Source: Callorhinchus milii
Lineage: Eukaryota
Direction of reading: 5' to 3'
Length of the DNA: 64,000 nt
Assembly: GCF_018977255.1 (NCBI RefSeq)
Contig: NW_024704771.1
Coordinates: 1,984,001 to 2,048,000 of the forward strand
In this document: piece by piece, positions 572 to 64,000 of the stretch
Layout of the letters: every line of letters starts with the position of its first letter
How positions within the stretch are numbered: position 1 is the stretch's first letter
Made by a program: the position numbers and the translations under genes
Notes under the pieces: model-generated
The model's database searches: none
The model's input: the letters and a program-made list of their open reading frames with translations, nothing else
What the model was told of the DNA's origin: nothing

Positions 572-9821
<9,250 letters not shown>

Positions 9822-50900: not shown

Positions 50901-52911
50901 GTCAAAACTTGCCCCCTCCCACACACACCCACACGCGTGCGCACACACGTACACACACGTGCGCGCACACGCGTACACACACATGCGCACACAAATACAC
51001 TCATACGCTTGTATTTATCAAAGGAGAAAGCACGTGAAAACTGCCGCTTTGTTTGCCTACGTAAAGGTCACCATTATTGCACACCGTTCAACGGCAAGGT
51101 TAGAGAATCTTTCAGCTGAGATGTGAAGCCAATGTCCCGTCCGTGCCAGTTCAATTGGATGTTGGAATTTAGCTACAAAATGCACAGACACCATACTCCA
51201 GGGCTGTTAGTTTACACAATGAACTGCAAACTAACCACAAACTGCATTCAACACACCGGCTTTCACGTCGGGAGGACGTCCCAATGCGCTGGACGTTTAG
51301 GGATTTGGACCCGAGCTGGGGATTGGGATCAGGAAGGGTGGAGGGCAGGGGTTGAAGGCGCGGTCACGGAGGGGGATCTGGAAGGAGGCGAGCGAGGGAG
51401 CGAGGCGAAGGGACTGTGGGATGGTGTTCCAAAGGGTGGGGGCAGAGAAGCTGAAGGCCTGACAGCCGATAGTGACGTGGAGCAGACCAGAGCCCGCTGA
51501 GCTTCTCTCATACATAATAGTCATACAATCTGCAGTTTACAGTCAATAAATCTGCCTCACATGTTACACAGTGAACGTGGATGGCAGGGATGTGCTGGTA
51601 GATGGAGGTGATGGATGGGAGTTTTATAATGCGATAGTAATAATAATAGTATTTTCATTTATCACGACTTTGAGACATCTCAAAGCGCTTCACAAAATAT
51701 ACTGTAAAGTGTAGTGCTGCATATTTTGTGGGCGAAAAGCAGCAGCCAATTGCGCACAGCATCGTCCCACAAACAAGTCGTGGATTGAGTGACCAACTTA
51801 CNTTTTTTATGAAGGCATTATTACCCCCGGAACAGCGATCCGCGACTTAACAACCAGGTTCCTACTGACTGCTGAGTAAACAGGTGTGTGTGGAGGAAGG
51901 AAACTTGCCCAGCGTTTCGCCCCAAGGAAAGTAAGGGGTTTGATGATATGGGGGAAAAGGGATGTTTATCCAGAACGAGTGAGATCGGAGGAATGTTTTT
52001 CTTCCTGTTGTAGGGTTTTCAGGGATTTGGCGACACCGGCTTCCACATGTCCTTCGGGATCGGAGCTTTTCCCTTTGGATTCTTCACCACAGTATTTAAC
52101 TCCAATGACAACCGCCAGCGAATGGGTGAGTGCTGTCAGCCAGTCTGTGGGGAGGTGGGTTGGTGTGTCGGGCCAGGGGGGGAGGTGGGTCGGGGAGCGG
52201 GAGAGGTGTGTCAGGGAGCTGGGGAGGTATGTCGGGAAGCGGGGGAGGCGTGTCGGGGAGCGGGGACGACGTGTCAGGTAGCGGGGGAAGCGTGTCGGGG
52301 AGCGGGGAGGAGTGTCGGGGGACGAGTGTCAGGGAGGGGGGAGGCATGTCGGGGAGCGGGGAGGCGTGTCGGGGAGCGGGGAGGCGTGTCGGGGAGCGGG
52401 GGAGGCGTGTCGGGGAGCGGGGAGGCGTGTCGGGGAGCGGGGGAGGCGTGTCGGGGAGCGGGGGAGGCGTGTCGGGGAGCGGGGAGGCGTGTCGGGGAGC
52501 GGGGGAGGCGTGTCGGGGAGCGGGGGAGGCGTGTCGGGGAGCGGGGGAGGCGTGTCGGGGAGCGGGGGAGGCGTGTCGGGGAGCGGGGGAGGCGTGTCGG
52601 GGAGCGGGGGAGGCGTGTCGGGGAGCGGGGGAGGCGTGTCGGGGCGGCGTGTTGGGGGAGGGGGGAGGCGCGTGGGGGGAGAGGGGATGTGCGTGGAGGC
52701 GAGGGGTTGGGGGGAGGTTTGCTGTGATGGCGAGTGACCAACAGTTGAGCCGCTGCTCTTCCTCATAGACAACGATCGGGGAAACCACGGCAACATGGAC
52801 TGGAATTCCTTCTTCGGGGGGAACCGTGGGGCCGCTGCCGGCAACAACAACTGGGATTCGCTCTTCCTCTTCATCGCCATCTTCTTCTTCTTCTGGCTCC
52901 TGAGCGTGTGA
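32799..52911 (+). CDS. RNF5: E3 ubiquitin-protein ligase RNF5, complete: join(32799..32932,45194..45212,47716..47828,48424..48478,52014..52125,52769..52911), 576 nt, 191 aa
   Basis: C3HC4 [63 protein letters not shown], then [28 protein letters not shown] and a C-terminal membrane anchor [19 protein letters not shown] that is typical of RNF5 rather than RNF185. All junctions are GT-AG and in phase. Confidence 0.93.
32955..33360. repeat. C-rich tandem repeat (about 30-bp ccacccctcaaccccccc(c)acctcctcc unit)
   Basis: Seen directly; start of RNF5 intron 1. Confidence 0.9.
33360..34010. repeat. Minisatellite, 25-30 bp unit cagtgggcacttacc(c/t)gcccc...
   Basis: About 20 degenerate copies seen directly. 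Confidence 0.9.
34305..34668 (-). mobile_element. tRNA-derived SINE, full length
   Basis: Family consensus. Confidence 0.8.
35156..35478 (-). mobile_element. tRNA-derived SINE, young deleted subfamily
   Basis: See 25677-25999. Confidence 0.8.
35520..37210 (+). mobile_element. Cluster of L2 3' fragments
   Basis: [15 protein letters not shown] and [20 protein letters not shown] motifs; repeated stem-loop/(TTG)n tails. Confidence 0.7.
41580..41950 (+). mobile_element. tRNA-derived SINE, full length
   Basis: Family consensus. Confidence 0.8.
42061..42792 (+). mobile_element. L2 LINE 3' fragment (RT YADD region to tail)
   Basis: MYADDTKL at 42065; [19 protein letters not shown] and IQNSAAHVL motifs; stem-loop tail with (TTG)n. 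Confidence 0.8.
43415..43768 (+). mobile_element. tRNA-derived SINE, full length
   Basis: Family consensus. Confidence 0.8.
44512..44975 (+). mobile_element. CR1-clade LINE 3' end
   Basis: [19 protein letters not shown]...[13 protein letters not shown]; (TTCTATGA)-type tail. Confidence 0.85.
45194..45212 (+). CDS. RNF5: RNF5 exon 2 (19-nt micro-exon, C-WPCLHQ)
   Basis: atctgcag|TTGGCCATGTCTTCATCAG|gtaaga. Confidence 0.9.
45286..45657 (-). mobile_element. tRNA-derived SINE, full length
   Basis: Family consensus; 74 bp downstream of the RNF5 micro-exon. Confidence 0.8.
47206..47558 (+). mobile_element. tRNA-derived SINE, full length
   Basis: Family consensus. Confidence 0.8.
47716..47828 (+). 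CDS. RNF5: RNF5 exon 3
   Basis: ccctgtccag|TGGTTAGAG ... GACCCCAG|gtacgt. Confidence 0.93.
47950..48235. repeat. G-rich degenerate repeat (gggttgggggcggggctgt)
   Basis: Seen directly; RNF5 intron 3. Confidence 0.75.
48424..48478 (+). CDS. RNF5: RNF5 exon 4
   Basis: ttgacag|ATTGAAGACTCCACCC ... AGAGGG|gtaact; [18 protein letters not shown]. Confidence 0.9.
49065..49470 (+). mobile_element. L2 3' fragment
   Basis: Same L2 3' UTR and stem-loop tail. Confidence 0.65.
52014..52125 (+). CDS. RNF5: RNF5 exon 5
   Basis: cctgttgtag|GGTTTTCAG ... CGAATGG|gtgagt. Confidence 0.92.
52195..52650. repeat. 21-22 bp CpG/G-rich minisatellite (ggggaggcgtgtcggggagcg)n
   Basis: About 20 copies, homogeneous in the 3' half; RNF5 last intron. 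Confidence 0.95.
52769..52911 (+). CDS. RNF5: RNF5 terminal coding exon
   Basis: cttcctcatag|ACAACGAT ... AGCGTGTGA. Confidence 0.88.
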
Positions 52912-53250
52912 GCTGCGGGCGGGCGGGGGGGGGGGGGGGGTGGGGGGGGAGGGAGGGGAGGGGGGGCGTGGGTGGCGGCAGTCAGCGGCCGGCCGCGGGA
53001 CGGGAACGGACACGGGGGTGGGGGAGGGGGAACGCTGCGGATCAGGGATCTTTTTGAAACGGCAACACTTTTTACAAGAAAAAAATTAACCAGAAGCGGG
53101 AAGAAGAGGCTGGTGGCCATGTTGGTCCCCTGGCGATCGGTCAGCACCGCAAACCGAATGGGCAGCAAACACGGCAGGACTCGGCCACGGCTCCGGTTCC
53201 CTGTTGCGCTGCGGTTTGAGCAAAGAGGTGATTCTCTCTCATAAACTCTT

Positions 53251-54850: not shown

Positions 54851-56425
54851 TGGTTGCGATGTGATCGAGGTGCTCAAGCTAATGAAAGGGTTTGAGAGAA
54901 TTAGTTCTGAGCAACTCGACAGCTGAAGGATCGAGGTGCAAATACTGCACTTGACGGCGCCCAAGAGGTTTGGCTACAACTTAACATTGTAATTGCTCTG
55001 TACTTTCCACTGAGAGAGGCCCACAAATTGCCAATGAAGTCCCACATCCACTGGCTGCCAGGCACAGGCGGGGAGGCATGAGGTTGAGGGGGCGAGAACA
55101 CAGAGGAAGCCAAACCACATGTTCTTGTGTACAGAAAAAAGGCCTGATCTCCAATCACAGTGGTTTCACACAGAAACTGGGCTCATCCCAGAGAGAATTT
55201 AATAATAATAAGCCTTGCATTTCATATTGCACCTTATCACGTCTTCGAGGAGCCTCAAAGCGCTTCACAGCATATGCAGTAAAGTGTAGCGACTGTGTAC
55301 TTTGTGGGCGAAACATAGCAGCCAATTGTGCGCAGCAGCGTCCCACAAACAGTTGTGGATTGAGTGACCAAAACATTATTTTTATTTATAATTTTCTCAC
55401 TTTTAACCTTTAAAAGGTTCTTTGGAAGTCAGGTTAACGTGATAGACGTCCTCCTGACGTGAAAGGCGCTTTATAAATGGAATCTTGTTGTTGTTGTTGT
55501 TGATAGGGTAGGATATATTCACAACCGGCTTGTGAGGCATTCCATTTAATTTTCCAATTCCTGGAGTGGACAGAAGTGGTTTAATTAAAGTGGTTTAATC
55601 TCTTCCCAAATCGTGCCCTTGGAAAAGCGTTGAGGACCAGTCTGTGTCTGTCTGACCTCCAGTACGGTGCTGTGGGGTGAAGTGCCATCGTTCGAATGAG
55701 ATGTTAACACCAAAGTGTTTCTGTGGACATTAATGATCCTATGGCGCTATTCAAGAAGATAAGTAAGTTTCTCTCTCCCCTTACCTTGGCTGACAATCCT
55801 CCCCCCCCACCCCCACCACCAAAGAAAAATTGGCCACTCACTTCACGATTGTTTGTGGGATGTTGCTGGTCGCCCGACTTTACACTACAGCCTGTGAAGC
55901 GCTTTGAGACAACAACAACAAATTCCACCTGTGTAGCGCCCTTCATGTTGGAAAGAACATCCCAGGGCGCGGGACAGTCAGGGCTTTCGGTCCTGAGCGA
56001 GGACTTAGGCTCAGGAGGGTTGGCGGGTGTGCAGGGGGATGGGAGTTTGGGCGAAGGCACAGTCGAAGACGAAGGCCTTCAGATGGGATTTGAAGGAGGT
56101 AAGAGGCGGGGGGATAGATCTGTCGCTATCGTGTGTTAGGCTGACACATAATGTGTTTCTAGTTTAGTGATACTTTGCTGCCGCATGTTGGTCACAGGAT
56201 AACAGTGACAGAACACAATACGAGCCCCGACAGTCACCAGTGTTTGAAAGCTATTTCCTACCTGAAGCTTCTGGCGTTAAACGAAGTGTCAAATATTTAT
56301 CCACTGAGCCTGAGCCTGGAGTCCAGCCAGAGCAGGAAGCCACACTGACACTGCTTGTAAATTTCAGTCAAATCTCAACCAACACCTCCTGACAGGATGT
56401 CAACAGGCTCCCCCCCCCCTCCACA

Positions 56426-57647: not shown

Positions 57648-58180
57648 CAATGGTGGGGCGGGAAGTGTGGGGGTCCTGAAGCAGACTGGGGAATGCCGAG
57701 CGGAGGGAACGGACAGCCTTATGGGGTTAGGAGGTCGGAGAGGTAGGAGGGGAGCAGGACCACAGAGGGCTTTGATGGTAACAACGATGGTTTTGTACTG
57801 GATTCTCTGAGGGATGGGGAGCCAGTGAAGCCGGGCAAGAACGAGGGTGATAGGTTCTCGGACCTCGGTGCGGGAGAGGACACGAGCTGTGTTCAAAAGG
57901 TGCTGTAATATTCTGATGGAGGGAAGTCTTGAGTTTAAATCCTCCAGAAGCAAAACAGTCACAATCAGCTTATGCTGGAAAGTGAACTTTCAACCACATC
58001 CTTTGAATATAAACATCCAGTAACCATGACAGTGATTACTCACTTCGTGGAAATCCTTACTGCTGAGCTGGTAGAGAGAGAGAGAGAGACAGCAAGAGCG
58101 AACACGAGAGAGCGAGCGCGGGGGAGGGAGCGAGGGAAGTGATTCGGGCTGCCCTACATTGCCCACAGTTAATGCCCAGC

Positions 58181-58247
58181 ATGGATAGAGATAGATTAAG
58201 AATCCCTTCGCTGCTATCCTCACTTCTCATCCTTTCTTCACTACCTG
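58181..58247 (+). CDS. IgSF gene leader (signal peptide) exon
   Basis: agcATGG Kozak context; hydrophobic core; CCTG|gtgagt phase-1 donor. Confidence 0.75.
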
Positions 58248-61200
58248 GTGAGTTTGTGGCAAAGAATCTAGAATGCGTTGTCACTTGAACTGGGGAGAGG
58301 GAGTGTACGGGCAAGTGTTTTAAAGGTCGTTGATCTCTCCTGAATACCCTTGTGAAGTTCTAGCAAGACTTGTGGAGTCCTGCAGGTCAGTGGTTAGAGC
58401 ACTCGATGTTTCCTTGCTCCACACACATGCTTCAGGAAGCATTTTCGGGAGAAAGCGTGACTCGGCCTGTGTCGGCTTCAGGGGCTAACCCGGGATATAT
58501 CCAGCCTTTGGTTTCCACAAAGTCAGTAATCGCTGTCACGGTTTCTGGATGTTGACCTAACAGTAAGGAGGAACATGGTTGTTAGTCGATTGGTTGAAAG
58601 CGTATCTCTTTTCCTGGCGTAAATTTTAAAAAAATTAATACATTAAAAAAATTTGGGCACTTAATCCACTGTTTCATTAATTATTCGATTGATTATTCAA
58701 TTAATATTATTAATTAAGACTATTCGACCGTGCTTTCGATCAACTTGCTTCCCCCCTGCCCTCCACCCTCCCCGATCCTGACCCCCAGCTCAGATCTGAA
58801 ACTCTGACTGTCCAGCGCCTTGGGACGTCCTCCCAACGTGAAAGGCACTTCACACATGTAATATTGTTGTTGTTGTTGTGGGACACTGCTGTGCGCAATT
58901 GGCTGCCGCATTTCATCCACAAAATGCAGTCACTTCGATTTACAGCATATTCTGTGAAGTGCGGCCCGAGGGCACGATAAGGCGCTGTATCAAATGTAAA
59001 GATTGTGATATTATTATTATAAATGTTTCTTTGTGATTTTCGACAGCCCATGTCAGCGCTCTTAAAGTGACGGCGTGCCAGAGCACAGTGACCAGATTCG
59101 TGAACCAGGACTCCGTGCTCCCCGTGCTTTACGAGGCACCGAACAGCTCGGGATTCCTGCGGATACAGTGGAAATTTTTATCACGATATAGGACGGAGAT
59201 AGTGATGACCCACAGTTTGCCAGATACGGCTCAGACCAAAGGCTGGATAAAACCCTTGTTTGTCCCTGACACCTACACAGGCAGAGTCACACTTTCTCCC
59301 GAAAATGCTTCCTTGTTTATCCGTGACCTGAGGCTGAACGACACCGGGATGTATCGGGTCACAGTGACGGATTCAAAGAAAGAATCTCAAGCGTACGTCA
59401 ACCTCACAGTCATCTCCCAACAAGGTAAATTGGGGAGTGCATGTTGTAATAATGACAATAATAATCCTTGCATTTGATAACAGCGTCTTATCATGTCTTC
59501 GAGACGTCTCAAAGCACTTCACAGAATAGACTGTAAACACTGTGTATTTTGTGGATGAAACGCAACAGCCAATTGCACACAGCAGCGTCCCACAGTCGTG
59601 GATTGAGTGACCAATTTTTTTTATTATTATTTTCTTTTGAAGGAATTATTACCCCCAGAAAAGCAATCTGCCAATCAACTAACAACTTGGTTCCTCCTGT
59701 TAGTTAACAGAGGCGTGTGTGTGGAGTAAGGAAACTTGCCCAATGTTTCTCCCTGCCGGGAATCAAATTGGGGGGAGGCCAGGCAGGGGGTGTGGAGCAG
59801 GCCGGAGCCCGCTTAGTGGGGGGAGCGGACAAGACAATACGGTGTTAGCAGGTTACAGAGGGAGGGAGGAGCAAGGCCGGGGAGGACTTTGAAGGTGAGG
59901 ACCACGTTTTAAACTTGATCCTGTGGGGGATGGGGAACCAGTGGAGCCGGGGTGAAGATAGGATTAATGGGGTCGAGAAGCCTGGTGCGGGAGAGGACAC
60001 AAGCTGCAGAGTTCTGGATGATCTGCAGCTTGTGGAGGGAAGAGTTGAGAAGGACAACAAGCAGGGAGTTGGTGTAGTCGAGCCTGGATGTTATAAGCGG
60101 TGTAACAGTGGTGTAACCTTCCTGTGTTTTCCTCCAGTGACCAGCGCTCCTACAACAGATAGTGGGGAGTCAAGACTGGTGATAAATGAGACAGCCAGCT
60201 TCGTCACGGCTGGTATTGCCCTCCTCTGCCTCTCAATACTCAGTTTGTTTCTCTTCTGCCTCAGAAGACGACGAAAAGGTGAGTTTGGTTATTAATTAAA
60301 AAATTATAATCAAATAATAATAACGATAATCCTTGCATTTGATATAGCACCTTATCACGTCTTCGAGACGTCTCAAAGCGCTTCACCGAATATCCTGCAA
60401 AGTGAATTGACTGTATATTTGTGGGCGAAATGTGGCAGCCAATTGTGCACAGCAGCGTCCCACAAACAGTCACAGATTGAGTGACCAAATTGTTATTTTT
60501 TTTCTTGAGCGATTATTATCAAACGTGCGGAGTAAGGAAACTTGCAGGCTTTTGCTCTGCCGGAAAACAAATCCAGGTCTCTTGCTTGCAAGGGGAGTGC
60601 TCTAACCACTGAGCTACGGGACTCCAAACAGGACATACATGAACCTCTTTGTTGGGGGTATTGAAACAAGAAAAGGTCAATTGTAGGGAAACTCAGAGGC
60701 CCCTTTCGATACAAAGGGGTTTGGAGATTCCACTCAACAATCTTTAGCTCACAAAGGGGAAACACTCAGGACTGTGACCATAGAGCCACGGTTCTGGTGA
60801 CCCAGATTTGTGTTCAGTGCCTGAATTTGTCACATAAATCGGGAACAACAATTCAAGCCAGATGTTTCCAATTGAAGCACTGTAAATTCTCCTCAAATGT
60901 CCCAGACAAGCCCTGAACCAAGCAAGTCAACAGTCACAGGCAAATAGAGAAGTTCTCATTTATCAAACTAATCTTCTCTAAATTCTTATCAGATCCCATT
61001 ACAGCAATTAGATTATATAAATATACAACTGGCCTCACTTATTCATGAATCTTCAACTGTGTGACTTCATTCACTAAACAAAGTCCAAGCGTCTGACTAT
61101 AGATATCCCACATTCCGTTTGATGGCTTCTGTTTGTGAATCCTCTCACAGCCACCAGCTCTGCTGAGCTGTGTCAGTCACACATCCCCACTTATGAGCGC

Positions 61201-62213
61201 AGAAAATGACTCCGCAAACGATCAATGCCTAAAGACAGTAACCTAAAGATGCCTAAAGATAGTAACAGTAACAATAATCCTTGTACTTGATATAGCACCT
61301 GATCATCACTCCTGATGTCCTGGCCAATAGTCCCCCAAATTAAATCTCTATGGTTGCTTGTGGGATATTGCTGTAATAATAATAATAATAATGATAATCA
61401 TAATCCTTGCATTTGAAATGGCGCCTTATCACATCTTCGAGATGTCTCAAAGCGCTTCACAGATAATACTGTAAAGTGAATAAACTGTGTATTTTGTTGG
61501 CAAAACGCGGCAGCCAAATTGTGCACAGCAGCGTCCCACAAACAGTTGTGGATTGAGTAACCACATTTTTTTGCAAGGGATTGTTACCCACGGTAAAGCA
61601 ATCCGCCAATCGACTAATAATTGGGTTCCTACTTAATAACTATAATAATAATAATCCTTGCATTTGGTGTTGCAAATTTCACGTCAGGAGGACGTCTCAA
61701 AACACTTACAGAATTTACCAGAATGCGCAGTGACTGTGTATTTTGTAGGCATGGAGTGAATGACCAATCTGCTGATTGTTGGCCAGGACACTGGGAGAAA
61801 CTCCCTATTCTTTTCGAATAGTGCCGTGGGTTCTTTAACGTCCAACTGAATGTTTGTGAAGCGCTCCTACATGATGGCCAGGCCAAATAAACACTCAATC
61901 CATCACTGTTTGCGGGACACTGCTGTGCGGAATTGGCTGCCCTGCTTTTCCCACAAAATATGCAGTCAATCCACTGCTCGAGAAGAGATGGGAGTTTCTG
62001 GTGTTGGGTGACTGGAGGCAGTGCCTTGAGACATCATGGCAGTGGGGTTAAAATCTATATCAAACGCAAAGAAAAAGAACAAAAAAAAAGCAATCAAAAT
62101 GTTCTGTCTCTTGTCCCAAACGTACAGCCTCTCATCTCGCCCCGTCAGTCTGCTCTACAGTAGATGGGAATTCGACGGCAAAGACAGACACTTGCACGTG
62201 CTCACTAACCCGG
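58181..62213 (+). CDS. Single Ig V-domain type I membrane protein (CD2/SLAM/CEACAM/HepaCAM-like), 3' end unresolved: join(58181..58247,59047..59424,60138..60278,62161..62213)
   Basis: Leader exon MDRDRLRIPSLLSSLLILSSLP. V exon with WKF (C strand), GRVTLSPENASLFIRDLRLNDTGMYRVTV and no B/F-strand Cys. TM exon FVTAGIALLCLSILSLFLFCL-RRRRK. Phase-1 junctions as expected for the Ig superfamily. Confidence 0.85.
59047..59424 (+). CDS. IgSF gene V-domain exon
   Basis: ttttcgacag|CCCATG ... CAACAAG|gtaaat; open 378 bp; DTGxY motif; four N-glycosylation sequons. Confidence 0.92.
59770..60100 (-). mobile_element. L2 3' fragment in an IgSF gene intron
   Basis: Reverse-strand LQIIQNSAA / LHWFPIPHRIKFK motifs. 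Confidence 0.65.
60138..60278 (+). CDS. IgSF gene stalk and transmembrane exon
   Basis: ttttcctccag|TGACC ... CGAAAAG|gtgagt; Ser/Thr stalk, 21-aa hydrophobic segment, RRRRK stop-transfer. Confidence 0.88.
60312..60626 (-). mobile_element. tRNA-derived SINE
   Basis: Family consensus; immediately after the TM exon. Confidence 0.75.
62161..62213 (+). CDS. Putative cytoplasmic exon of the IgSF gene (VDGNSTAKTDTCTCSLTR)
   Basis: gtctgctctacag|TAGATG ... ACCCGG|gtaagt; strong splice sites; open in the phase-1 frame. Confidence 0.6.
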
Positions 62214-62334
62214 GTAAGTGAACAGTCAGAAGCTTCAGACAAACAGCCATTATTGTAAGCCCCATCATCCGTGGCCGGTGTCAACTGTGACACATGATGG
62301 GGCTTACAATAATGGAGGGAATTGACAAGTATGT

Positions 62335-62566
62335 TCCCGTGTTCCTATGTAACAATATTTCTGTGTTTCCGTGTTTCTATGTACCTATGTTTCCGTGTTC
62401 CCATGTTCCTATGTACATGTTTCTGTGTTCCCGTGTTCCTATATACATATGTTTCTGTGTTCCCGTGTTCCTATGTATATATGTTTCTGTGTTCCTGTGT
62501 TCCTATGTACATGTTTTGGTGTTCCCGTGTTCCTATATACATATGTTTCTGTGTTCCCGTGTTCCG
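62335..62566. repeat. Degenerate tandem repeat (tgtttctgtgttcccgtgttcctat...)
   Basis: Seen directly. Confidence 0.9.
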
Positions 62567-64000
62567 GTTGTCAGTCAGGGTAATAATTCTTTCAAAAGTA
62601 AATAATAATAATAAACAAAAAATTGGTCGCTCAATCCACAACTGTTTGTGGGATGCTGCTGTGCGCAATTGGCTGCCGTATTTTTCCCACAAAATACACA
62701 GTTAATTCACTTTACAGTATATCCTGTGAAGCGCTTTGAGACATCTCGAAGACGTGATAAAAAGCTGTATCAAATGCAAGGATTATTATTATTATGTCTT
62801 CACCCCTTGGATGGCTAGGATGGGTATTGCAGGACATTCGAATGAGGAATGTGATTTGCCCTCGCAAAAAGGAAGTGGAGATACAGGAATACAGAGCTCA
62901 CTTGAGCACATGGTCACCAGGCTCAAGTGAGCTCTGTAGAATAAAAACCCTTATTATTATATTAAGTTTACTTTTTGAAGGGATTATTAACCCCGGAAAA
63001 GAGATCCACCAACCAACTAACAACCAGGTTCCTACTTACTGCCGGGTAAACAGAGGCTCGTGTGTGTGGAGTAAGGAAACTCACCCAAGGTTTTGCCCTG
63101 CCCGGAATTAGGCGAGTGCTCTAACCACTGAGCTCTACTTGTTCGAGTTTCAGCTCCATATTGTCCTTTGACAATTTAGGGGCCGAGAGGGTTTGGGGGA
63201 GAGGGGGATTGGGGCTTGACTGCGGGGAAAATCTTTCATACTCCACAGAATATGGTGCTCTCAAAGTGAAAAGTGTTTTGGTCTAATTCGGTTAATGGAG
63301 GTTGATGAAGAACTAACCTCGCTCACCAATAACAAAAGTATTGTGAATGACATTTTGATGTGGTGAGGTGCTATCAGATCGCAAGTTTCTTCTTTCTCTC
63401 AACCTGGCTTGCAAGGGAAGTGAGTGAGGAAAAAACAACTCAAAATGTTTCTGCTGAGCTTTTGAGAGCCGAATGTTTCCATTGACACAGGAAAGAATAC
63501 TCCAGCAGCAAAGGTCTTGATCATCTCATATATTCAGCTGCTGTCAGCAGAACACAGCGAGTGAGCGAGCGAGTTCTCCTTTCCATTGTTAACCAACCAA
63601 CTAATCAACCACATTGGCTTTAGTGTCAAACCACTTTCATGTTTGGTTTCTTTTCAATTGTCAGCTTTTACATTGAAACGCAAAACACTTGGGTTTATAT
63701 AGCTCCTTATCACGTCGAAACATCTCCATGTATCACATGTAACATTAACCGTTTATCTTCCGAGGGGTGGGGGGGGGGAGGGGAGGGCGCGGGGGTTAAA
63801 CGAGGTGACTGTGGAGCTGAACTGCCCCAAGGTGACAGGCCGTCGCAATGGAATGTGGGAATTGAACCAGTCTCCAGTCTGGTTCCTGAGCCAGACAGGT
63901 CCGTGGTATTCCAGGTCACTGCTGATGGCAGCACAGCCTTGGCTCATCAGCAAAACCTGGAAGAGCAAACCAGTCACTGGGGGCAGGGAATCATCTCACT

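What the first reader, a model, noticed from the sequence alone, without database searches (positions are those of the whole stretch)
58181..60278. Unassigned MHC-linked single-V receptor lacking the canonical Ig disulfide
The V domain has W in strand C and DTGxY in strand F but neither B- nor F-strand Cys. This is the hallmark of CD2/SLAM, CEACAM and HepaCAM N-terminal domains, yet there is no following C2 domain: V, short Ser/Thr stalk, TM. It has five N-glycosylation sequons and one free Cys near the N-terminus. Established: SLAM (1q23) and CEACAM (19q13) clusters lie in MHC-paralogous regions and Xenopus has MHC-linked IgV genes. Inference: this may be an MHC-resident member of that ancient family, not present in mammals.
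Basis: partly seen in the sequence, partly recalled or inferred. Interest (0 to 1): 0.75.

Follow-up and report, generated by a model that had tools for sequence, protein, structure and literature searches.

The report
Shark single-V inhibitory receptor beside RNF5
This is a real, expressed elephant-shark gene for a small cell-surface protein with one antibody-like domain that lacks the usual disulfide bond and a tail carrying two inhibitory signalling motifs; it sits among MHC framework genes, but it is an unnamed, fast-evolving member of a known kind of immune-type receptor rather than something categorically new.

Summary
Window 58181-60278 (+) holds the leader, V and stalk/transmembrane exons of Callorhinchus milii LOC103190391, which RefSeq calls "uncharacterized protein" (277 aa). 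RNA contigs from four runs confirm the splice joints. Valines (V52, V130) occupy both canonical cysteine positions of the V domain. There are five extracellular N-glycosylation sequons, one free cysteine and no C2 domain.

An 86-nt cytoplasmic exon lies at 62128-62213. A last exon about 3.8 kb beyond the window encodes an ITIM (VTYAEI) and an ITSM (TEYTSI), 29 residues apart. The protein is therefore most likely an inhibitory receptor.

It belongs to an unnamed family of cysteine-less V receptors found in sharks, rays, lungfish, amphibians, turtles and birds. Pipelines label these variously as CEACAM-, HEPACAM- or A33-like. No mammalian member and no one-to-one orthologue was found.

It fails the CEACAM synteny test and lacks the C2 domain of CD2/SLAM and HEPACAM. 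It lies directly after EGFL8, a dead AGPAT1 and RNF5, the slot that AGER holds in mammals. Whether that position is ancient remains untested.

The parts
55741..55763 (+). Alternative first exon of RefSeq isoform X2 (P0151, begins MALFKKIT). It gives no signal peptide and lies in repeat-like sequence, so it is probably a non-productive start. The 3' end is approximate.
   Evidence: L001 gene start 10001 = window 55741; ORF; isoform sequence
58121..58247 (+). Exon 1: 5'UTR plus leader. In-frame ATGs at 58172 (weak context) and 58181 (good Kozak context). Ends in phase 1 with donor GTGAGT.
   Evidence: RNA contigs start at 58121 and join 58246>59046 (X3 record 15 and X5 record 21); sequence
58434..58512 (-). 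Inverted partial copy of the V exon inside intron 1. It is 86% complementary to 59235-59313 and corresponds to strands C''-E of the V domain.
59047..59424 (+). Exon 2: V-set Ig domain. V52 and V130 replace the canonical cysteines. Also W67, the R105-D124 pair, DTGMY, four N-glycosylation sequons and free C36.
60138..60278 (+). Exon 3: Ser/Thr stalk with sequon N168, a 21-residue uncharged transmembrane helix and an RRRRK stop-transfer.
62128..62213 (+). Exon 4: 86-nt membrane-proximal cytoplasmic exon containing a C-T-C motif. Skipping it shifts the frame and gives the ITIM-less RefSeq isoform P0154.
   Evidence: Joint 60276>62126 in all four RNA runs
63999..64000 (+). Marker only. The terminal coding exon lies outside the window at L001 22039-22191 (about window 67779-67931). 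It encodes the ITIM VTYAEI (Y240), the ITSM TEYTSI (Y269) and the stop codon. Its last 41 nt form the first copy of a 49-bp tandem repeat.
   Evidence: RNA contigs run 813-1319 nt beyond exon 4

Best explanation
LOC103190391 of the elephant shark is an intact, transcribed five-exon gene. It encodes a type I membrane glycoprotein with a signal peptide, one V-set Ig domain held together without the B-F disulfide (Val/Val in place of Cys/Cys), a short O/N-glycosylated stalk, an uncharged transmembrane helix, and an 83-residue cytoplasmic tail ending in an ITIM and an ITSM 29 residues apart.

It most likely works as an inhibitory immune-type receptor. The V domain binds a ligand on another cell, or itself, through its GFCC' face, as other cysteine-less V domains do. 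Src-family kinases then phosphorylate Y240 and Y269, and the doubly phosphorylated tail recruits tandem-SH2 phosphatases (SHP-1/SHP-2). The ITSM may also recruit SAP-type adaptors. Alternative splicing (skipping the 86-nt exon 4, or an alternative last exon) would give ITIM-less forms.

Shown here: the gene structure, transcription, the domain fold, the absence of the cysteines and the presence of the motifs. Inferred: ligand binding, phosphorylation, phosphatase recruitment and expression in immune cells.

In evolutionary terms it is a divergent, orphan member of an unnamed family of cysteine-less V receptors of cartilaginous fish, lungfish, amphibians, turtles and birds. It lies in the MHC class III framework next to RNF5.
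For: Gene model and splice joints.

Fold: V-set by Pfam and by a confident AF2 model, with generic V-set structural matches.

Missing cysteines: Val at both canonical Cys columns, and 42 of 46 family V domains also lack Cys there.

Motifs: ITIM at 238-243 and ITSM at 267-272, with no charged TM residue.

Relatives: the same five-exon layout, with a last exon carrying an ITIM-like motif plus a C-terminal xEY(T/A)S(I/V)R motif, occurs in the Heptranchias relative P0027 and the elephant-shark paralogue P0123. Other family members also carry ITIM+ITSM tails.

Distribution: family range.

Neighbourhood: RNF5-like gene directly upstream and an EGF-domain exon at about 4 kb.
Against: No functional data exist and the tissue of expression is unknown because the runs are coded. 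The ITSM codons are the first unit of a 49-bp tandem repeat, so that part of the tail is young DNA, although the motif itself is shared with relatives. Tail similarity to relatives is too short to be statistically significant. The nearest mammalian look-alikes by shape, VSTM5 and HEPACAM, are adhesion or neural proteins, not immune inhibitors.
Confidence: 0.72

Rival explanations
1. It is a true member of the CEACAM family: a CEACAM1-like inhibitory gene reduced to the N domain, like CEACAM19/3/4, that has moved into the MHC region.
For: The best single-sequence PDB matches are CEACAM1/6/5 N domains, through the motif Y-x-G-R...N-A-S-L-x-I...N-D-T-G-x-Y. The N domain lacks the disulfide. It has an ITIM+ITSM tail. 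A frameshifting small cytoplasmic exon recalls the CEACAM1 L/S switch (my knowledge). A language-model neighbour cluster is named CEACAM19. Pipelines name relatives CEACAM4-like or CEACAM5-like.
Against: CEACAM genes are defined by synteny with LIPE, CNFN, PAFAH1B3 and BCL3 (PMC5112662, PMC3628338), and this gene lies after RNF5 instead. The family profile scores elephant CEACAM1 N at only 25.9 bits, against 57-62 bits for shark SLAM-like V domains and 47.6 bits for a shark 'CEACAM6-like' N domain. With the profile, CAR, MOG and BTN3A1 V domains outscore isolated CEACAM N domains. The tree does not join it to the CEACAM-like rows. Its closest bird relatives are in ducks and chicken, which a 2026 preprint reports to lack CEACAM genes (PMC13278318).
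Confidence: 0.1
2. It is a CD2/SLAM-family receptor that has lost its membrane-proximal C2 domain.
For: It has a cysteine-less V domain and an ITSM (TxYxxI). Shark SLAM-like V domains get the highest outside scores from the family profile. 8 of 46 family V domains weakly hit Pfam Receptor_2B4. An unchecked note reports a CD2/SLAM-type receptor 60-124 kb further along this scaffold (s1-139757).
Against: This protein itself has no Receptor_2B4 hit and no C2 domain. The tree gives only 80/80 support for a loose group that includes the SLAM-like rows, with long-branch warnings.
Confidence: 0.08
3. It is the cartilaginous-fish counterpart of a mammalian MHC class III Ig gene. The candidates are AGER (same slot after RNF5) and MPIG6B/G6b-B (same architecture: one V domain, ITIM plus ITSM, class III).
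For: Its position immediately after RNF5 is where AGER lies in mammals (gene order from my knowledge). G6b-B shares the V-TM-ITIM-ITSM plan and MHC class III residence (my knowledge).
Against: Neither AGER nor G6b-B appears among the listed sequence or fold matches. AGER is V-C1-C2 with canonical cysteines and, as I recall, is transcribed towards RNF5, whereas this gene runs the same way as RNF5.
Confidence: 0.04
4. It is mainly an adhesion or morphogenetic membrane protein like VSTM5 or HEPACAM, and the tyrosine motifs are incidental.
For: VSTM5 clusters are the closest structural neighbours (rmsd 1.6-2.0 A, TM 0.76-0.81), and VSTM5 shares the single-V-plus-TM plan. HEPACAM and HEPACAM2 are also near. 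Many relatives have short tails without motifs.
Against: The Pfam VSTM5_C domain is absent. The paired ITIM/ITSM at a tandem-SH2 spacing recurs in relatives with the same exon plan. Sequence identity to VSTM5 and HEPACAM is only 19-27%.
Confidence: 0.12

Closest known systems
CEACAM family (CEACAM1; single-N-domain members CEACAM19/3/4)
   Same: IgV-like N domain without the B-F disulfide. The strand E-F motif (NASLxI...NDTGxY) matches CEACAM1/5/6 best among solved structures. The tail has an ITIM plus ITSM. A small frameshifting cytoplasmic exon could switch between long and short tails.
   Different: It is not in the CEACAM synteny block (LIPE-BCL3; PMC5112662, PMC3628338). It has no IgC2 domains. 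The whole-domain profile score to mammalian CEACAM1 N is low, and there is no tree support.
CD2/SLAM family
   Same: Cysteine-less V domain and ITSM signalling. Shark SLAM-like V domains are the best-scoring outside group for the family profile.
   Different: There is no C2 domain and no Pfam Receptor_2B4 match for this protein. It has only one ITSM, paired with a classical ITIM.
HEPACAM / HEPACAM2 and VSTM5
   Same: VSTM5 shares the whole plan (one V, short stalk, TM) and is the nearest shape match. HEPACAM-type names are what annotation pipelines give many relatives. From memory, both have V domains without the canonical cysteines and a similar R-x-x-F-x-N-G-S-L-L-L...D-x-G-x-Y motif.
   Different: HEPACAM proteins have a C2 domain and long proline-rich tails. 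VSTM5 has its own C-terminal domain (PF28389), absent here. Neither carries an ITIM/ITSM pair, and identity is 19-27%.
G6b-B (MPIG6B), the mammalian MHC class III inhibitory receptor
   Same: One V-type domain, a TM helix, an ITIM plus an ITSM at similar spacing, and a gene in the MHC class III region (my knowledge).
   Different: No detectable sequence or fold-rank affinity. The neighbours within class III are different.
Unnamed family of 'uncharacterized' V receptors in sharks, rays, frogs, turtles and birds (e.g. Heptranchias XP_067829904, chicken LOC771657, duck LOC110351392)
   Same: Shared consensus SVLLPVSY...L-x-I-x-W...Y-x-x-R-x-x-F-P-E-N-A-S-L-L-L...D-S-G-x-Y...N-L-T-V without cysteines. 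Same five-exon plan and tail motifs in P0027 and P0123.
   Different: This protein is only 29-40% identical to any member. It falls outside both well-supported clades (elasmobranch and tetrapod). Many relatives have 2-6 tandem V domains.

Membership tests
CEACAM | N-terminal IgV-like domain lacking the canonical disulfide | tested here: met
   V52 and V130 occupy the Cys columns
CEACAM | Location in the conserved CEACAM synteny block (LIPE, CNFN, PAFAH1B3, BCL3...; PMC5112662, PMC3628338) | tested here: not met
   The upstream neighbour is RNF5, preceded by the AGPAT1 relic and an EGFL8-type EGF exon (note s1-139583)
CEACAM | N domain groups with CEACAM N domains by sequence | tested here: inconclusive
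   phmmer top PDB hits are CEACAMs but only over 34 residues. The profile gives 25.9 bits to elephant CEACAM1 N, against 57-62 bits to shark SLAM-like V. The tree is unresolved.
CEACAM | ITIM/ITSM or ITAM tail encoded by separate cytoplasmic exons | tested here: met
   VTYAEI and TEYTSI lie in the terminal exon, preceded by an 86-nt exon
CD2/SLAM | V domain followed by a C2 domain | tested here: not met
   RNA contig joins the V exon directly to the stalk/TM exon (X5 record 22)
CD2/SLAM | Match to Pfam Receptor_2B4 (PF11465) | tested here: not met
   No hit for this protein even at E up to 10 or 0.1; weak hits in 8 of 46 relatives
CD2/SLAM | Cytoplasmic ITSM TxYxx(V/I) | tested here: met
   TEYTSI at 267-272
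HEPACAM family | V plus C2 ectodomain and a long proline-rich tail | tested here: not met
   Single V domain and an 83-residue tail
VSTM5 | Single V, TM and the VSTM5_C domain (PF28389) | tested here: not met
   The V+TM plan and the shape match, but there is no VSTM5_C hit
G6b-B (MPIG6B) | Detectable homology of the V domain to G6b-B | tested here: inconclusive
   Absent from the listed PDB and Swiss-Prot matches, but only the top 30-60 rows are shown
AGER (RAGE) | V-C1-C2 ectodomain with canonical cysteines | tested here: not met
   One cysteine-less V domain only
ITIM/ITSM inhibitory receptors (functional class) | (I/V/L/S)xYxx(I/V/L) plus TxYxx(V/I) about 25-30 residues apart, with an uncharged TM helix | tested here: met
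   Y240 and Y269 are 29 residues apart, and the TM helix has no charged residue
ITIM/ITSM inhibitory receptors (functional class) | Phosphotyrosine-dependent recruitment of SHP-1/SHP-2 | not testable with these tools
   Needs biochemistry

The most novel reading that the evidence does not exclude
The gene is a surviving representative of an inhibitory, cysteine-less-V receptor lineage that was already resident in the MHC class III framework (the RNF5 neighbourhood) of the first jawed vertebrates. The dispersed CEACAM, CD2/SLAM, HEPACAM and VSTM5-type V domains, or the mammalian class III receptor G6b-B, would descend from that lineage. That would give direct positional evidence that this receptor superfamily started in the proto-MHC.
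Probability: 0.06. Interest if true: 0.75.

Novelty: new member of a known kind. Interest (0 to 1): 0.35.

Why it matters
Comparative immunologists debate which Ig-superfamily receptor families were part of the primordial MHC. An expressed inhibitory receptor with a CD2/CEACAM-type (disulfide-less) V domain right next to RNF5 in a slowly evolving chimaera genome is one more data point for that question. It also draws attention to a sizeable unnamed receptor family in sharks, amphibians, turtles and birds that annotation pipelines label inconsistently. On its own it is a fast-evolving orphan gene with predicted function only, already modelled in RefSeq, so the immediate impact is modest.

Tried and rejected
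1. A word-indexed search with the full protein found only the protein itself, so no close orthologue is on record.

2. Fold searches (PDB Foldseek, VIA-align, Swiss-Prot AFDB, ESM Atlas) returned generic V-set domains: CAR, aggrecan G1, sodium-channel beta subunits, PD-L1, MPZL1, VCBP. They cannot assign a subfamily. Only VSTM5 stands out a little, by rmsd.

3. The synteny test in Heptranchias (L003) and Pristis (L004) failed. The 10-kb flanks hold only repeats, and there is no RNF5 match. Look-ups of P0007 and P0197 found no record.

4. A search for tandem paralogues with 46 family V domains, against the window, L001 and L002, found none near this gene. It found only the intron-1 relic.

5. 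Blastp of the tail against all fetched proteins gave only non-significant motif-level matches.

6. Literature searches for this gene, for HEPACAM-like genes in sharks, or for an Ig gene next to RNF5 in cartilaginous fish found nothing.

7. I considered a pseudogene or a false gene model and rejected both: the ORF is intact and spliced contigs occur in four runs.

8. I did not build a phylogeny with curated CD2, SLAM, HEPACAM, VSTM5, NCR3 or XMIV sequences. No tool supplied those sequences, and I did not type them from memory.
Full report
**What is there**

The window comes from the elephant shark, Callorhinchus milii, scaffold MU249860.1. The finding's coordinates cover three exons on the + strand that I read directly from the sequence:
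- a leader exon, with ATG at 58172 or 58181 and ending at 58247 (donor GTGAGT, phase 1);
- a 378-nt V exon, 59047-59424 (phase 1 to 1);
- a 141-nt stalk/transmembrane exon, 60138-60278.

An exhaustive HMMER search recovered a 277-aa protein identical to these exons (P0002). It is RefSeq XP_007909341.1, "uncharacterized protein LOC103190391 isoform X1", and comes with three further predicted isoforms.

**Transcription**

I laid Logan contigs of four RNA runs from two studies on window 58001-64000.
- They join 58246 to 59046 (X3 record 15, X5 record 21).
- They join 59422 to 60136 and 60276 to 62126 (X5 record 22). The last joint, GT..AG, is present in all four runs.
- They cover the whole V exon without a mismatch.
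- Two contigs continue 813 and 1319 nt beyond exon 4 onto DNA outside the laid stretch.

The gene is therefore real, spliced as modelled, and extends past the window.

- The V exon passes Pfam V-set (35.6 bits, cut-off 26).
- With an alignment of 46 relatives it gives a confident AlphaFold model (pLDDT 87.3, pTM 0.81) with the nine-strand V pattern.
- In the family alignment, and in the HMMER alignment to pIgR domain 4, the canonical B- and F-strand cysteine columns hold V52 and V130.
- W67, the R105-D124 pair and D-T-G-M-Y128 are present.
- There are five extracellular sequons (N58, N112, N123, N144, N168) and one extracellular cysteine, C36, which is not conserved in relatives.
- The V exon is spliced straight to the stalk/TM exon, so there is no C2 domain.

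The transcript continues with an 86-nt cytoplasmic exon at 62128-62213. Its terminal exon lies about 3.8 kb beyond the window's end (L001 22039-22191; window = L001 + 45740). That exon encodes VTYAEI (an ITIM, Y240) and TEYTSI (an ITSM, Y269), 29 residues apart. The transmembrane helix has no charged residue. This is the signature of an inhibitory receptor that recruits tandem-SH2 phosphatases. The recruitment itself is inference.

RefSeq isoform P0154 corresponds exactly to skipping the 86-nt exon, which shifts the frame and removes both motifs. Isoform P0152 ends after exon 4. I could not verify those joints because the last exon lay outside the laid stretch.

**Relatives**

- HMMER against 1.84 billion representatives gave 215 hits at E <= 0.001.
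- The named ones form an unnamed family in sharks, rays, the elephant shark itself, lungfish, frogs, a caecilian, turtles and birds.
- Most are "uncharacterized". Others are auto-named CEACAM4/5-like, HEPACAM-like, HEPACAM2-like or A33-like.
- No mammal appeared except as true CEACAM1, at E 3.7e-7. Teleosts appeared only distantly.
- The family consensus lacks both cysteines in 42 of 46 V domains.
- The Heptranchias protein P0027 and a second elephant-shark gene, P0123 (LOC103189486, 1.4 Mb further along the same scaffold), have the same five-exon plan. Their last exon carries an ITIM-like motif and a C-terminal xEY(T/A)S(I/V)R motif.
- The word-indexed search found no close homologue.
- In a maximum-likelihood tree the protein sits on a long branch outside the two well-supported clades (elasmobranch 97/99, tetrapod 99/97). 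Only an 80/80 loose grouping includes P0027.

I therefore call it an orphan member of this family.

**Which known family**

- *CEACAM.* The single sequence hits CEACAM1/5/6 N domains best among solved structures, but only over the E-F strand motif. The family profile scores whole CAR, MOG and BTN3A1 V domains (50-52 bits) above the CEA N domain (32 bits). It also scores shark SLAM-like V domains (57-62 bits) and a shark CEACAM6-like N domain (47.6 bits) above elephant CEACAM1 N (25.9 bits). CEACAM genes are defined by synteny with LIPE, CNFN, PAFAH1B3 and BCL3 (PMC5112662, PMC3628338), and that feature is not met here.
- *CD2/SLAM and HEPACAM.* Both require a C2 domain, which is absent.
- *VSTM5.* It is the nearest shape match and shares the single-V plan, but its C-terminal Pfam domain is absent.
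- *G6b-B and AGER.* Neither appears among the listed matches.

The protein works like CEACAM1, SLAM, PD-1 or G6b-type inhibitory receptors but cannot be filed in any named family.

**Genomic setting**

- Upstream in the window lie an EGF_CA exon at about 4 kb and the AGPAT1 relic at 21-24 kb (note s1-139583).
- Next come RNF5-like exons at about 47.6 and 52.0 kb, called as a 191-aa RING-finger gene that ends about 2.8 kb before the gene model.
- This is the mammalian class III order EGFL8-AGPAT1-RNF5, and the V gene occupies the slot of AGER. The gene order and the AGER slot are from my knowledge.
- Unchecked notes of this scan place RGL2, HSP70, butyrophilins, an NKp30/B7-H6 pair and B3GALT4-WDR46 on the same scaffold.
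- No family V exon other than a partial inverted relic lies in the window or within 14 kb downstream.
- The bird and frog relatives sit on contigs of 90,861,225 and 233,740,091 bp. I recognise these as chicken chromosome 4 and X. laevis 1L, not their MHC chromosomes.

Linkage to MHC framework genes is thus real in the elephant shark. Its antiquity is not shown.

**Verdict**

The gene is a new, uncharacterised member of a known kind (a disulfide-less V-set inhibitory receptor), already modelled in RefSeq and with no literature that I could find. Interest is modest unless conserved RNF5 adjacency can be shown in other cartilaginous fish.

Noticed in passing
window 58434-58512 (-) and 59235-59313 (+): A 79-nt inverted repeat, 86% complementary. 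Intron 1 holds a reverse-oriented partial copy of the V exon (strands C''-E). In the pre-mRNA it could pair with exon 2 across a 722-nt loop.
   Followed up: partly
L001 22151-22352 (about window 67891-68092, beyond the window): A 49-bp tandem repeat of 4.3 copies. Its first copy supplies the last 41 nt of the coding sequence (HTEYTSIRAHTH plus the stop codon, so the ITSM included); the other copies lie in the 3'UTR.
   Followed up: partly
L002 7095-7478 (-) and 12281-12343 (-), beside the gene at L002 10001-22560: The elephant-shark paralogue LOC103189486 (P0123), 1.4 Mb further along the scaffold, has a 96% identical inverted copy of its V exon and leader upstream. This suggests a recent head-to-head duplication.
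   Followed up: no
window 55741-55763: The alternative first exon of RefSeq isoform X2 (MALFKKIT) lies in repeat-like sequence and provides no signal peptide, so it is probably not a productive start.
   Followed up: no
window 59145, 60151, 60228: RNA contigs differ from the genome at three places: 59145 A>G (S59G, also in a MetaClust transcript, and it keeps the sequon), 60151 T>C (synonymous) and 60228 G>A (C182Y in the TM helix). These are probably alleles.
   Followed up: partly
window 52099-53085 (-): A 329-codon GC-rich open frame (proline- and acidic-rich) lies opposite the last RNF5-like exon region. It has no Pfam match and is probably a composition artefact of the GC-rich, repeat-rich stretch.
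   Followed up: partly
window 2981-3114: A run of 134 N (assembly gap or masked) within a low-complexity region upstream of the EGF exon. I left it as is.
   Followed up: no
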